Source: Zygophlyctis sp. KS116 (lineage: Eukaryota; Fungi; Chytridiomycota). From it: 5,155 nucleotides of DNA. Below are positions 1 to 5,155 of this stretch, in pieces (position 1 is the stretch's first letter; each line of letters starts with the position of its first letter). The notes below the pieces were generated by a model that saw nothing but the letters and a program-made list of their open reading frames with translations, ran no database searches and was not told where the DNA came from. The stretch is from positions 1-5,155 of the forward strand of contig BAAFSQ010000499.1 in assembly GCA_054661495.1 (NCBI GenBank). The letters are read 5' to 3'. Made by a program: the position numbers and the translations under genes.

Positions 1-16
1 TAAATCTAACCAATAG
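1..16 (+). other. 3' end of a spliceosomal intron of the GT32 gene
   Basis: CTAAC branch-like motif at 6-10, then TAG at 14-16, which is an in-frame stop immediately before the recognisable GT32 coding sequence. Confidence 0.75.
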
Positions 17-759
17 AAATTTAGAGCATGGAGACAGTCTTGGATAAATAATCATCCAAGTTGGATCCATAAGCTATGGACTGATGATGATAACAGGCTT
101 TTTGTATCAACTCACTATCCATGGTTTTTAAGTACGTATGATGAATTACCAAGAGACATTCATCGTATTGATACTGTCCGATATATGTATCTCCACAAAT
201 TCGGCGGTGTATACGTTGATCTGGATTTTGAAAGTATTAGACCAATGGATGAATACTTGAAAGGGAAGCAAATGATTCTAGGACGAATGGGACTTAACGA
301 ATCTTATGAACATTCTATTCCTAATGCTTTAATGGCTTCAATTCCCGAACATCCATTCTGGATCAAAGTACTTGAATATATTACAAAAAATTTAAAAAAG
401 AACTTGTCAGTAGAACAGGTTTATTCAAATATTTAACATTTATAGTTGACTGGACCTGCGATGATTTTTGATGTATACAAAAATTATAAGAATGATAAGT
501 CAATCACTTTGAGTGCAGAAGGTTTTTTAAATTTATTAAACTCTAGATGTTTGGTACCCGTATAGCTGGACTTATGATGATTGGACTGCCACTTGTTCTG
601 CACAAAGAAATACATTTGACGCTGTAAAATGTAAAAAGCATTTTGTCACGAGTAACACTCTGTCTATTACTTATTGGAGTCATTCGTAATTACATTTTAA
701 GATTAATGAATAGATGGGAAGGATCAGAGAATAATGTGATTAAATCTGAAAAGAAATAA
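17..759 (+). CDS. Glycosyltransferase family 32 (DXD sugar-binding; SUR1/CSH1/OCH1-like mannosyltransferase), 5'-partial. Exons 17-418, 446-521, 547-685, 714-759 (220 aa in window)
   Basis: The frame of ORF 185..436 is open upstream to an acceptor at 16 (ctaaccaatag). Spliced translation: KFRAWRQSWINNHPSWIHKLWTDDDNR...DTVRYMYLHKFGGVYVDLDFES...NALMASIPEHPFW...VEQ|LTGPAM...AE|DVWYPYSW...TYWSH-S|WEGSENNVIKSEKK*. The LWTD, RY..L...GGVY.DLD, N..MAS...HPFW, TGP and terminal HSW motifs are typical of GT32. TGP and HSW are restored only by removing the short introns. Confidence 0.9.
419..445 (+). other. Spliceosomal intron, 27 nt, phase 0
   Basis: GTTTAT...TTAAC...TAG, very AT-rich. Removal joins VEQ to LTGP and removes two in-frame stops. 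Confidence 0.88.
522..546 (+). other. Spliceosomal intron, 25 nt, phase 1
   Basis: GTTTTT...TTAAAC TCTAG. Removal restores the frame to DVWYPYSW. Confidence 0.82.
686..713 (+). other. Spliceosomal intron, 28 nt, phase 2
   Basis: GTAATT...TTAAT GAATAG. Removal gives YWSHSW, the GT32 C-terminal motif. Confidence 0.82.
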
Positions 760-774
760 TTTTTAGTATCATGA

Positions 775-870: not shown

Positions 871-1493
871 ATGAAAGTTCAACAACCTGCGCCAGCGTTT
901 TCTACTGATGCTCTATTGCCAAACGGTACTTTTGGAACTGTGTCTCTTGACCAGTTTAAAGGAAAATATCTTGTTTTATTCTTTTATCCTTTGGACTTTA
1001 CGTTTGTTTGCCCAACTGAAATTATTGCTTTTTCTGATAGATTTGCAGAATTTGAGAAACTTAATACTGCTGTTGTTGCTTGTTCTGTTGACTCTAAGCA
1101 CTCTCATTTGGCATGGACAAACACGCCAAGAAACAATGGAGGATTGGGAAGTATGAGTATTCCAATTTTATCTGATTTGACTAAATCTATTGCTAAAGAT
1201 TATGGTGTTTTAGTAGAATCTGGGCCAGATTCTGGTATTGCTTTAAGAGGAACATTTGTGATTGATCCAAAAGGAATTTTAAGAATTGCTCATGTCAATG
1301 ATTTACCTATTGGAAGATCTGTTGATGAAGTTTTACGTCTAGTTGAAGCTTTACAGTTTAATGAAGCTCATGGAGAAGGTACTTTTGATTTTTTAAAAAA
1401 ATAGTTTGCCCTGTTAACTGGCATAAAGGAGATCCAACTATGAAGGATGATCCAGTTGCTTCAAAGGCTTATTTTAACAAGGTATGTATTTAA
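871..1493 (+). CDS. TSA1: Typical 2-Cys peroxiredoxin (AhpC/Prx1 subfamily, thioredoxin peroxidase). Exons 871-1378 and 1405-1493 (198 aa); alternative end at 1516 if 1482-1507 is spliced
   Basis: ATG at 871 in an AAAA-ATG context. Peroxidatic motif [14 protein letters not shown], plus DS..SHLAW, GGLG, ALRG.F.ID and [11 protein letters not shown]. After splicing: [12 protein letters not shown] (resolving Cys) and SKAYF (YF motif). Confidence 0.97.
1379..1404 (+). other. Spliceosomal intron, 26 nt, phase 1
   Basis: GTACTT...TTAAAAAAATAG. Removal rebuilds the highly conserved HGEVCP motif exactly (G|TT = Val). Confidence 0.95.
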
Positions 1494-1507
1494 AAATGTG
1501 ATTCAAG
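1482..1507 (+). other. Possible terminal intron of the peroxiredoxin, 26 nt, phase 0
   Basis: Strong donor AAG|GTATGT and modal length to an AAG acceptor, giving ...YFNK|MF*. The unspliced reading ...YFNKVCI* is also viable, and the other acceptors here are TAG. Confidence 0.5.
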
Positions 1508-1555
1508 ATGTTTTAAGATGGATTTAGAGGAAAATCCTCGGAAAAAGTTTAAAAA

Positions 1556-4500
1556 ATGAAGGAATTCATTCTAGGAGTGATTTTTGGAGTTTTGTTTATA
1601 GTTTTTGGAGTGTTCTTGGTATTATACAAGACTAGAATTGTCCCTAAAGTGAGTAAAATTAATGAGGAATGGCCGAGCGCTCTACAGGAATTCATAAAAA
1701 GGAACTTAACTAGGGATGATGCAGACCATTTGGTACAAGATTTAGTTATGAGTCCAACTCTTGATATATCATGGCTTAATCTGATATTTACTAGACTCTT
1801 TCTCTCTCTAAGATCATCAAACTCTTATAAACAATTGACGCTGGAAAGGATTTCCAGGAATATGAATAGGAACTTGAAAAAAGGACTTTTAGTAATTTAC
1901 AATATATAATTATAGAGAGAAATGAATTTGATAGACTTGGATTTGGGGGATAATGCACCAAAAGTAATGGGGGCACGGATTATTAAGAGTTTAACAACTG
2001 ATTTGGCGATTCAAATGGAATTTGATATTTTGTATCAAGGTGGATCTTCAATATCAATAGAAGCAATTATTACAGGATCTATAAAGTTTCCTGCTAGGAT
2101 TTATTTAAATGAATTTGCAGGTCAATTAAGGTTTAGAATGCCAAGTTTAGACTCTCAAGATAAAATTGGAGTTGCTTTTGTCAAAGATCCTGGTGTTAGA
2201 TTTACTATTGATGCTCCATTGTCTGTGAAAACTTCTGAAACTGTTCGTGGGATGGTTAATAGAATATTAGAGTCTATTGCAAGAAAAGTCTTTTTGGATT
2301 TATGGGTTTTGCCATCTTGGAGGACATTTTATTTACCAATGATGAATCCAAGTCCTCATTTTGTAAGTTTTTCTATTAGAATTTAGAAAATTTATGTTTT
2401 GGTATTTAATATTTAGGAATTTAATCAAGAAATAGTGACAGAAAAAGCTTATCCTCCTTCTTTTACCAGTTCAATAGCTTCTAAAGCTGCTACATTATGG
2501 GAAGGAACGGCTCCACTTTTGAAATTTAGGGCGTTTTCAGATTTTGATCCTTTTATAGATTCTAGGCTCTTTCCTACAGATTTAGAAATTTCTACTACAT
2601 CTGTGACACAATTGAAAGTTATGGAAGAGGGGCTGGTAGAGTATTTTATGGAAACAATCAATACGCCTCATACATCAAGTCAAGATGAGACTTCTTTATG
2701 GAAAATTTATAGAAAGAAGGCGGGAGTTGAATATTTTAAGAGAATTATTTCATATAATGATAAAATGATTGAAATGGTTAAAGGAAAGATATCTATTCAG
2801 TGTGATTTTTCCAGAGTATTTTCAGTATGTCTTTTTTTCTAATAAGGTAGTTGTTGTCAAATTCAGAGCATTTTCGGTATATTTCTGATTTCTTTGAGAA
2901 TGCATTATTGCAATCACAATATGATACTAATCAATCTGTCGAAACTTTTCAATTCAAGCGTGTCAAAGTCCCTGTTCATCTATTTGAAGTAAAAAAGCCA
3001 ATAAACGACTCTAGCTTCATAGTGGTATTCAGATCGGTCTTGTGGAAGAGCAATCTAGCTCTAGATAAGGACAAGAAATATGAAACTGAACCTAAAGTAT
3101 CTGTCTCTCATCCAGAGTCTTCAGAAAATAAATTAAGGCACCGCCGCACTTTAAATGGTGATGTTCCTGAATCTGGATATGTGGGAACAGGAGAAAGTAT
3201 AGACCCGAAAATTTACATATTTGGTTATCTTATTGAAATGGCTCCTGAAAAGCCATCGTTGATGTCTAATATCACTCTAATATCTTCTTCTTCACCGGTT
3301 ATATCTTCTCATCTGGCAACTTTTAAATTTTGTGCCAAGCTGAAGTCGTTTATCGAAGAGTTAGTGTCATTATCATCTTCTTTATCTATTCAAGAGTCTA
3401 AGGAGCTTCGTAAGTTGGATGCCCAAGGACCCCGTATTGATAAATTGAAGTCTTATTTTGGATACACTGCGAATCTTATGAAAAACTATAGCTTTATTAA
3501 ATCTCGTGAACTTAATCAGGAGGAGTCTGATGGATCAGATGATGAAAGTGTTTACAGCTCCAAGGTCAATCTTATTGATACAGCATCTGAATTTAATGAT
3601 GTCACTACTGAATTTGACTGTGAAAATTATGTAGATATAACTGTCAACAGCCGAGAAATTTTAAAAATCCCTATAGATTATACGCTCAAGACTGAAAAGG
3701 GGCAGGTCAAATTCAACTGGGAATTTATGTCCGTTACTGAATTGCCTATTTTCTTTGGTATCGAATTTATTCCCTCTGATGGCTTTTTAAGCACACACTA
3801 TGAAAAGACAGACTGTGGCTCTTGGATCATTTTTCCGTTTTCGTGTATTTTAGCTTATTCTAAACCAGCATTTGGTAAACTTTTGATTGATGATTTTCCT
3901 GCTGGAAAGTTTGTTGTTACCTTTGATAATTGGTCGACGACAAAAGGTGCTATTCGTAGGCTGACTACTCGTTGTTGGATATCATATACTTGTTCTCCTT
4001 CAATCGATATTCTAATGAATGAATTATATCAGAGGCCTTTATCTGAATGTCACTTTGAATTTATCATTCCTCGAAAGGCTATCTTGGCTGTTCCTATTCC
4101 TTTTGATTGCATCTTCGCAAATTCTCAAATACCTGAAAAAATACAACTAAACTGGAGTGGAACTGTAGAAGGCGGTGATATCTTCTTTTCCATCTTCTTG
4201 CAAGAGAAGGTCAATGAATCTTTCAGTCAGAGTGAATATGTTGATGAATACCAGGAAATTAAAGATTCTTTAATAGGTTCGAATGAAAGCATCATGGGCG
4301 TAATTTCTAACAAAGTAAAAAATGAAAATAAAGGTGAAAATTCGAAAGCAAAGATATCCAAATTTATAGGAAAAGCCAAGGAAGTCTATAAAGAGGTCAA
4401 GACTGTAATAAACCAGCCCAGATATATTCCGACTTCTGATGTTTCATTAAAATCATCTATCAGCTCGCGAATAAATTCAGTGGTTGTTAAATCAGAAATG

Positions 4501-4761
4501 GCCTCTAGAAAGATAATGCAGGTGATGACATCGGACTCATCTCAGGATTTAGACACCTTATTTCTGGAGTCCTCGCCTTTCATCAGGAATCATCCTAATT
4601 TGAAGAAAATCTTTCCGCATTGCAAACTTAATTCTACCGAACAACCTTTCAAAGGGACTTTGGAAATATCTAAAAAACCAGGGATATACTTCCTTCTTTT
4701 TGAAAATTCACAGGTTTTATCGGCGCCCAAACAAATAACATGCGCCATTACAATAAATTAG
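1556..4761 (+). CDS. Putative membrane-anchored lipid-transfer/tether protein: TM - SMP (Mmm1/PDZD8/TEX2-like) - START-like - two GOLD-like domains. Exons 1556-1891, 1916-2362, 2417-2824, 2851-4761 (1033 aa)
   Basis: ORFs 1556..1909, 1922..2386, 2435..2842 and 2851..4761 join in frame through three GT-AG introns. N-terminal hydrophobic helix FILGVIFGVLFIVFGVFLVLY. SMP-like motifs SWLNLIF.RLF, LDLGDNAP, EFDILYQGG, F.G.LRF, VAFVKDP and WVLP (~1760-2345). START-like motifs WKIY...GVEYF, KGKI.I.....VFSLL, FIVVFRSV and GYLIE (~2690-3365). GOLD-like motifs NWEF...IFFGI...GKFVVTFDN (~3625-3990) and LNW...DIFFSI...PGIYFLLFENS...K (~4050-4758). Confidence 0.8.
1892..1915 (+). other. Spliceosomal intron, 24 nt, phase 0
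   Basis: GTAATT...ATAAT TATAG with two in-frame stops. Removal joins KGLL to REMNLIDLDLG inside the SMP-like domain. Confidence 0.88.
2363..2416 (+). other. Spliceosomal intron, 54 nt, phase 0 (or two tiny introns around a microexon)
   Basis: Canonical GTAAGT donor and TTAAT ATTTAG acceptor. Removal joins SPHF to EFNQEIVTEK in frame. Confidence 0.75.
2825..2850 (+). other. Spliceosomal intron, 26 nt, phase 0
   Basis: GTATGT...CTAAT AAGGTAG. Removal shifts the frame to join RVFS to LLSNSEHF within the START-like domain. Confidence 0.9.
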
Positions 4762-4876: not shown

Positions 4877-5155
4877 AAATACCAATTCGCAATGTTATTC
4901 ATAAAGTTATTATCTATTCCAATTCGAGCATTTTGCCTATACTTTGCTCAAAGATCTGTAACATGCCGAGAAGATGACAACATTTGTAGCCTATTCCCAT
5001 TGACAATAGCATATATGTATCCTTTTCAGAGTTTCCTTGCAAGAATGATAGCACTGGGTGCCAAATCTGTGAATGACTGGGTTGTCCGAACTTTAGAGTA
5101 TGAAGCCACATTCGGTTAGGCAAATAATGAGCATCCTGCGTGGTCGCCTTGGTCA

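What the first reader, a model, noticed from the sequence alone, without database searches (positions are those of the whole stretch)
1556..4761. Hidden ~1033-aa TM-SMP-START-GOLD-GOLD protein: candidate undescribed dual lipid-transfer tether
Seen: four separate ORFs splice into one reading frame with an N-terminal TM helix (FxxGxxxG, as in the Mmm1-type anchor). Established: SMP/TULIP domains (Mmm1, Nvj2/TEX2, PDZD8, E-Syt/tricalbins) are ER-anchored contact-site lipid shuttles, usually paired with C2, PH, PDZ or C1 domains. START domains (CERT, STARD3) carry single lipids. Cytosolic GOLD domains accompany SEC14L, ACBD3, FYCO1 and Osh3 and often mediate Golgi or membrane targeting. Inference: two unrelated lipid-transfer folds plus tandem GOLD domains in one polypeptide is a combination I do not recognise, and it could be a lineage-specific ER-Golgi or ER-endomembrane lipid exchanger.
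Basis: partly seen in the sequence, partly recalled or inferred. Interest (0 to 1): 0.85.

Follow-up and report, generated by a model that had tools for sequence, protein, structure and literature searches.

The report
Chytrid double lipid-transfer tether protein
This freshwater chytrid fungus gene encodes a membrane-anchored protein that joins two different lipid-carrying modules (an SMP tube and a START pocket) with two GOLD modules; the family is conserved across chytrids, was noted in 2018 only as an unnamed SMP paralog, and I found no description of this domain combination or of its function.

Summary
Confirmed. Four phase-0 exons (introns 24, 54, 26 nt) give 1033 codons. Introns 1 and 3 sit at the same codons in all four related loci, intron 2 in three. 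About 20 annotated chytrid proteins carry the same parts co-linearly in one chain. Pfam names no domain exon by exon, but family profiles and folds do: SMP (Mmm1, E 3e-13); classical START (model of a Globomyces ortholog: ACOT11 Z 21, CERT 18.6, Lam/Aster only about 8); two GOLD domains (SEC14L2/ACBD3 Z 12-13; second domain p24 Z 10.7). It is not Mmm1, Mdm12 or Nvj2, which this genome encodes separately, and no PDZ or C1 domain was seen. It is not narrowly lineage-specific: the full architecture spans Chytridiomycota and Piromyces; aphelids have SMP-START; Nematocida has SMP plus a weaker START-like match. Two orthologs are in the dataset of Wideman et al. 2018, which reports an unnamed SMP paralog of flagellated fungi; its text mentions no START or GOLD (figure not viewable). 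Likely an ER-anchored contact-site protein moving bulk phospholipid by SMP and one specific lipid by START. Target organelle, ligand and mRNA are untested. The scan had not reported it elsewhere in this genome.

The parts
1556..1891 (+). Exon 1 (aa 1-112): TM anchor, linker, first part of SMP
1568..1624 (+). N-terminal signal-anchor helix (aa 5-23), FxxGxxxG, basic residues follow (C-terminus predicted cytosolic)
   Evidence: N-terminal TM in 35 of 37 homologs, FxxGxxxG-type motif in 25 of 37
1751..2356 (+). SMP/TULIP domain (aa about 66-259), split by intron 1
   Evidence: family profile on exons 1 and 2, E 5e-10 and 3e-60; profile hits Mmm1 5yk6 E 3e-13, E-Syt2, Mdm12; PF26547 PDZD8_N on orthologous exons
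1892..1915 (+). Intron 1, 24 nt, GT-AG, phase 0
   Evidence: same position in L001-L004
1916..2362 (+). Exon 2 (aa 113-261): SMP core
2363..2416 (+). Intron 2, 54 nt, phase 0; an internal AG at 2385-2386 would give a 24-nt intron and a stop at 2414 (TM-SMP-only product)
2417..2824 (+). Exon 3 (aa 262-397): linker and N-terminal half of START
   Evidence: START-region profile E 2e-16
2468..3375 (+). START domain (aa about 279-572), split by intron 3, with a disordered loop insert at about 3050-3205
   Evidence: exon 3 E 2e-16, exon 4 E 8e-22; fold of ortholog P0106:315-675 matches ACOT11, CERT, STARD4/5
2825..2850 (+). Intron 3, 26 nt, GT-AG, phase 0
   Evidence: same position in L001-L004
2851..4761 (+). 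Exon 4 (aa 398-1033, stop at 4759-4761)
3430..3489 (+). Conserved basic, moderately amphipathic segment after START, followed by an acidic linker (about 3500-3620)
   Evidence: hydrophobic moment 0.39, about the 95th percentile of the exon
3622..3993 (+). GOLD domain 1 (aa about 655-778), SEC14L/ACBD3 type
   Evidence: model of window 3571-4758: SEC14L2 Z 12.8-13.2, ACBD3 Z 12.1-12.9
4021..4755 (+). GOLD domain 2 (aa about 788-1032) with a roughly 130-aa insert (about 4207-4599) holding two predicted basic helices (4342-4413, 4459-4527)
   Evidence: profile to ACBD3 GOLD E 3.5e-12; p24delta1 GOLD Z 10.7 on model residues 160-396; helices; top hydrophobic moment 0.56 at 4375-4428

Best explanation
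A single-pass ER membrane protein acting at a membrane contact site. The N-terminal helix anchors it with the rest in the cytosol (topology predicted). The SMP tube, probably dimeric as in E-Syt and Mmm1, carries glycerophospholipids with little head-group selectivity (inferred from family). The START pocket that follows about 20 residues later binds one specific amphipathic lipid, a sterol, ceramide, fatty acid or phospholipid, and shuttles it across the same gap (inferred). The tandem GOLD domains and basic helices dock the far end on a target endomembrane (Golgi-like or endosomal/vacuolar) through a partner protein and anionic lipids (inferred). Shown here: gene structure, the four folds, their order, conservation, and separateness from Mmm1, Mdm12 and Nvj2. 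Not shown: mRNA, location, ligands, transfer.
For: Architecture. One chain: about 20 annotated chytrid proteins with all four parts in order; Terramyces and Kappamyces proteins that were not in the profiles score on all four; intron-free ORFs P0056 and P0043 carry SMP, START-like and C-terminal GOLD-like matches in leave-one-out tests. The START is under selection: W126 and R239 invariant in 31 of 31, S240, K350, E354, D28 in 30 of 31, N173/H176 in 27 of 31. TM-to-SMP linker about 42 aa, near the 45-75 aa quoted for membrane-anchored TULIPs (PMC4463742). SMP leaves head groups exposed and is broad, START buries them and is selective (PMC6071762), so the two modules would not be redundant.
Against: No experiment on any member. 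The closest START fold is ACOT11's, which from my own knowledge is regulatory and not a shuttle. The START lacks the usual P..RDF loop motif. Aphelid members have SMP-START with no GOLD match, so GOLD-based targeting is not universal. GOLD domains do not fix a target organelle. No RNA support in this organism.
Confidence: 0.5

Rival explanations
1. One transporter plus one sensor: only the SMP moves lipid; the START binds a lipid and switches tethering or SMP activity on or off, as START domains are thought to do in ACOT11/12, DLC1-3 and plant HD-ZIP proteins.
For: Best structural match is ACOT11 START including its N-terminal extension (Z 21.3 over 220 residues; Atlas neighbours ACOT11, CERT and RhoGAP-START). 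START packs close behind the SMP.
Against: CERT, STARD5, STARD4 and STARD10 follow at Z 18-18.6, so the fold does not separate sensor from shuttle; sequence identity to all is 7-15%.
Confidence: 0.22
2. The contact site is the zoospore microbody-lipid globule complex: the protein tethers the ER cisterna (rumposome-type) to the lipid globule, microbody or plasma membrane and feeds stored lipid to the swimming spore.
For: Full architecture found in zoosporic fungi; fatty-acid-binding ACOT11 START is the nearest fold; basic amphipathic helices could bind a lipid-droplet monolayer. The organelle complex is from my own knowledge, not tested.
Against: Likely homologs persist in Nematocida microsporidia, which have no zoospore, and in Piromyces; no localisation data.
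Confidence: 0.15
3. An accessory ERMES-like or PDZD8-like tether between ER and mitochondria or late endosomes, with START and GOLD in place of PDZ, C2 and C1.
For: SMP falls in Pfam PDZD8_N and is nearest Mmm1 among solved structures; Mmm1-type TM motif.
Against: The genome has its own Mmm1, Mdm12 and Nvj2; no PDZ or C1 found; homologs persist in microsporidia, reported to lack ERMES (PMC10648710).
Confidence: 0.1
4. Gene-model artefact: a short TM-SMP gene (splicing to the AG at 2386, stop at 2414) followed by a separate START-GOLD-GOLD gene.
For: Intron 2 is twice the usual length for this genome and has an AG at the usual distance; no RNA data here.
Against: L001 reads through the junction as one ORF and L003 has a 25-nt intron there; annotated orthologs and intron-free ORFs are single chains; the Globomyces model carries a Trinity transcript id. 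A minor short isoform remains possible.
Confidence: 0.03

Closest known systems
Unnamed SMP paralog of flagellated fungi (Wideman et al. 2018, PMC6069729)
   Same: Very probably the same family: JGI models Glopol1|590046 and Enthel1|486021 in the paper's sequence list are P0106 and P0011 here.
   Different: The paper's text treats only the SMP domain and names no START or GOLD domain or function; its Figure 2 (tree and domain sketches) could not be viewed, so clade assignment is inferred. Aphelid and microsporidian members are not in it.
Mmm1 (ERMES)
   Same: N-terminal FxxGxxxG-type TM and SMP; best solved-structure hit.
   Different: Mmm1 ends after the SMP; a separate Mmm1 gene exists in this genome (G000:C102).
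PDZD8
   Same: TM-SMP with a long C-terminal extension; Pfam PDZD8_N match; some orthologs are auto-named PDZD8.
   Different: No PDZ, C2 or C1 match in seven orthologs; START and two GOLD instead.
Nvj2/TEX2
   Same: ER-anchored SMP protein; Nvj2 moves ceramide at ER-Golgi contacts (PMC11320393).
   Different: Nvj2 has TM-PH-SMP; a separate such gene exists here (G000:C180).
CERT, STARD3 and ACOT11 START proteins
   Same: Classical START helix-grip fold (Z 17-21).
   Different: They have PH/FFAT, MENTAL or thioesterase partners, none has an SMP; 7-15% identity.
SEC14L2-4, patellins, ACBD3 (lipid-binding domain plus cytosolic GOLD)
   Same: Same GOLD subtype at the C-terminus of a lipid-handling protein.
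   Different: One GOLD, with CRAL-TRIO or ACB domains; here two GOLD, the second with a long helical insert.
Lam/Aster (VASt) proteins
   Same: ER-anchored contact-site proteins with a START-superfamily domain, the type known in yeasts.
   Different: The domain here is far closer to classical START (Z 21) than to Lam2/Aster (Z 8.1-8.5); anchor is N-terminal; no GRAM.

Membership tests
SMP/TULIP contact-site proteins | SMP domain homology | tested here: met
   Profile A4 to Mmm1 E 3e-13, E-Syt2 4e-4, Mdm12; 24 of 26 members match Pfam MMM1, best 5.5e-11; window exons score 224.6 bits on A4. No fold was predicted for this domain.
SMP/TULIP contact-site proteins | N-terminal membrane anchor | tested here: met
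   (prediction only)
SMP/TULIP contact-site proteins | Lipid binding/transfer and localisation at a contact site | not testable with these tools
   needs experiment
Mmm1 | Orthology to Mmm1, protein ends after SMP | tested here: not met
   Pfam MMM1 finds C102, C180, C205 but not this gene in the genome; C102 has the Mmm1-type TM and SMP; 770 aa follow the SMP here
PDZD8 | PDZ and C1 domains after the SMP | tested here: not met
   none in window exons or seven orthologs
Nvj2/TEX2 | PH domain before the SMP | tested here: not met
   only about 42 aa between TM and SMP; separate TM-PH-SMP gene on C180
START (classical, PF01852) | Helix-grip fold with N-terminal helix and C-terminal helix closing the pocket | tested here: met
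   Tested on ortholog P0106:315-675 (pLDDT 78): Foldseek E 3e-10 ACOT11, top 49 rows all START; Z 21.3. Window exons 3 and 4 match the family profile end to end.
START (classical, PF01852) | Pfam START score above cut-off | tested here: not met
   2 of 31 members match weakly, best E 0.0045; profile finds no PDB sequence. It is a divergent START recognised by fold.
START (classical, PF01852) | Binds one lipid molecule | not testable with these tools
   needs experiment
Cytosolic GOLD (SEC14L/ACBD3 type) | Eight-stranded beta-sandwich with GOLD motifs, twice | tested here: met
   (19 of 29 members match GOLD_2, best 3e-10)
Flagellated-fungi SMP paralog of Wideman et al. 2018 | Belongs to that clade of the published tree | tested here: inconclusive
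   Two orthologs are in the paper's sequence list and the family is separate from Mmm1/Mdm12/Nvj2, but the figure could not be read

The most novel reading that the evidence does not exclude
An SMP tube and a classical START shuttle in one chain work as a coupled two-lipid exchange or relay at a contact site peculiar to zoosporic fungi, and a derived form is kept by microsporidia that lost ERMES, where it may be one of few remaining ER contact-site lipid movers.
Probability: 0.3. Interest if true: 0.8.

Novelty: new variant of a known kind. Interest (0 to 1): 0.62.

Why it matters
Known SMP proteins pair the tube with targeting domains (C2, PH, PDZ, C1), and I found no paper describing an SMP joined to a classical START or to GOLD domains. 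A natural two-carrier protein lets one test whether bulk phospholipid flow and selective lipid transport are coupled in a single tether. It also gives a domain content and testable function to an SMP paralog left unnamed since 2018, shows that current Pfam/UniProt names miss three of its four domains, and points to a contact site kept in chytrids, gut anaerobic fungi, aphelids and probably microsporidia, whose lipid logistics are little studied.

Tried and rejected
Pfam on single exons: no SMP, START or GOLD. START-region profile against PDB sequences: nothing. ESM Atlas feature searches for P0106 and P0084: no usable hit. RNA run X20: no spliced joints. Micro-exon model for intron 2 (2387-2395): rejected because its donor is absent in three other strains. 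Prx-SMP fusion as in the Kappamyces model P0132: rejected as a probable annotation merge, since the Prx has its own stop in window, L001 and L003 and the fused model lacks the start of the TM region. GOLD domains or a second START in microsporidian members: suggested by eye, not supported by profile comparison. Second START in P0056: not supported. GOLD matches of P0059 vanish in leave-one-out. The exon-2 tree does not resolve the deep branches or the outgroup, so monophyly was not shown by tree. Literature searches for SMP with START, GOLD, VASt, StARkin, chytrid or microsporidia found no description of the architecture; subscription journals are mostly missing from that library.

Full report
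Gene structure. The window is a compact, AT-rich eukaryotic contig. The neighbouring peroxiredoxin and glycosyltransferase genes have 26-27-nt introns, so tiny introns are normal here. Four related environmental loci (L001-L004, 38-94% identity in exon 4) have introns 1 and 3 at the same codon boundaries, and L002-L004 have intron 2 as well; in L001 exons 2 and 3 read as one ORF. Intron 2 is the only doubtful junction: it is twice the usual length and an AG at 2385-2386 would give a 24-nt intron and a stop at 2414. A micro-exon solution fails because its donor (2396) is mutated in other strains. The single RNA run available gave no joints, so splicing in this organism is inferred.

One chain. 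A search of 1.84 billion representatives with exon 2 gave 100 hits, 35 at E below 1e-30. Many are 1000-1800-aa proteins of cultured chytrids: Globomyces, Boothiomyces, Terramyces, Kappamyces, Entophlyctis, Thoreauomyces, Phlyctochytrium, Synchytrium, Lobulomyces, Clydaea, Chytridium, Podochytrium, Dinochytrium and Piromyces. The window's four exons map co-linearly onto them, and domain profiles find SMP, START region, GOLD1 and GOLD2 in that order in about 20. Terramyces and Kappamyces proteins that were not in the profiles score on all four. Two intron-free ORFs from compact genomes (P0056, P0043) carry SMP, a START-region match and C-terminal GOLD matches in leave-one-out tests. The Globomyces model bears a Trinity transcript id. 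The fusion is therefore not an artefact of this gene model.

Domains. Pfam sees none of them on single exons. SMP: the family profile hits Mmm1 (E 3e-13 over its whole length), E-Syt2 and Mdm12; 24 of 26 members match Pfam MMM1; orthologous exons match PDZD8_N. START: because intron 3 splits it, I folded the Globomyces ortholog (P0106:315-675, pLDDT 78). The top 49 Foldseek rows are START domains (ACOT11 E 3e-10); the exhaustive aligner gives ACOT11 Z 21.3 over 220 residues, CERT 18.6, STARD5 18.5, STARD4 18.4, bacterial cyclases about 11, Lam2 and Aster 8.1-8.5. It is a classical but divergent START: only 2 of 31 members touch the Pfam model. The window's exons 3 and 4 cover the family profile end to end (positions 4-149 and 151-377 of 378). 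Polar residues are strongly conserved (W126, R239 invariant; S240, K350, E354 in 30 of 31), which argues for a working pocket; I could not inspect the model to confirm they face the cavity. GOLD: the model of window 3571-4758 has two beta-sandwiches. The first matches SEC14L2 (Z 12.8-13.2) and ACBD3 (12.1-12.9), the second p24delta1 GOLD (Z 10.7), and the profile hits ACBD3 at E 3.5e-12. GOLD2 carries a 130-aa insert with two predicted basic helices, one with the highest hydrophobic moment in exon 4. A single N-terminal TM is present in 35 of 37 homologs.

What it is not. The genome encodes Mmm1 (C102), a TM-PH-SMP Nvj2 (C180) and an Mdm12-like gene (C205) separately, and the Pfam MMM1 model does not pick this gene; it is single copy. 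Orthologs auto-named 'PDZ domain-containing protein 8' show no PDZ or C1 match.

Distribution. The window sits in a well-supported clade of six uncultured sequences within the chytrid part of an exon-2 tree (100/99), apart from the Globomyces-Kappamyces-Terramyces clade; deep branches are unresolved. Its DNA occurs in freshwater metagenomes. Amoeboaphelidium members have SMP-START and no GOLD match. At least eight named Nematocida species or isolates have an 850-960-aa TM-SMP protein that scores E 1e-35 to 1e-42 on the SMP profile and has a START-like region right after it (hhalign probability 61-74%, E below 1e-4); GOLD domains there are unsupported. Microsporidia are reported to lack ERMES (PMC10648710). 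I saw no named hit from Dikarya among those I could name, but did not name all hits.

Literature. Wideman et al. [quoted passage not shown] Their sequence list includes Glopol1|590046 and Enthel1|486021, which are P0106 and P0011 here. This family is very probably that paralog. The text says nothing of START, GOLD or function; the figure with domain sketches is not held, so I cannot exclude that it draws them. The TULIP review PMC5507252 and the 2024 SMP review PMC11320393 contain no such architecture, and eight keyword searches found none.

Mechanism. Most likely an ER-anchored contact-site protein. The TM-SMP linker of about 42 aa is close to that of other anchored TULIPs (PMC4463742). SMP domains leave head groups exposed and carry many phospholipids, whereas START domains bury the head group and are selective (PMC6071762), so the two modules suit different cargo. 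The GOLD pair and basic helices take the place that C2, PH or PDZ domains have in other SMP proteins and are the likely target-membrane module. I put 0.5 on a dual carrier at an ER-endomembrane contact, 0.22 on START as a sensor (its nearest fold, ACOT11's, is regulatory by my own knowledge), 0.15 on the zoospore microbody-lipid globule complex, 0.1 on an ERMES- or PDZD8-like role, 0.03 on a gene-model artefact.

Verdict. The observation and the domain reading hold. It is a new architectural variant of a known kind of protein, in a family that was glimpsed once at the SMP level and never characterised. Interest 0.62.

Noticed in passing
window 871-1516 (+): 2-Cys peroxiredoxin with 26-nt introns at 1379-1404 and 1482-1507; its predicted stop lies only 39 nt before the ATG of the SMP gene. 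The same neighbour is upstream in L001-L003 and in Kappamyces, where the NCBI model (P0132) merges the two genes, probably wrongly.
   Followed up: partly
window 1-760 (+): Glycosyltransferase with DXD motif (PF04488, E 1.4e-4) and a 27-nt intron at 419-445; relatives L001 and L002 have an FtsJ methyltransferase at this position instead.
   Followed up: no
window 4885-5155; G000:C728, C1007: The contig ends in high-copy DNA (contig depth roughly 7-20 times the gene's in three DNA runs) that resembles a repeat spaced about 2.28 kb apart on C728, with a Velvet-like ORF between the copies; C1007 has a similar Velvet ORF. Relatives have one Velvet gene just downstream of the SMP gene. Possibly a tandemly amplified velvet unit.
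   Followed up: partly
window 2363-2416: Intron 2 is twice the genome's usual length and has an AG at the usual distance; use of it would give a 270-aa Mmm1-like TM-SMP isoform.
   Followed up: partly
P0084, P0133-P0141 (Nematocida): Microsporidia that are reported to lack ERMES keep a TM-SMP protein of 850-960 aa with a START-like region and two or three further unassigned domains.
   Followed up: partly
P0056 (L022), P0043 (L023): Intron-free members from very compact genomes have an extra domain of about 200 aa between START and the GOLD region that looks START-like by eye but did not score.
   Followed up: partly
L010 (G000:C46): A second, separate START gene in this genome (PF01852 above cut-off) with a C-terminal hydrophobic tail and probably an upstream TM exon.
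   Followed up: no
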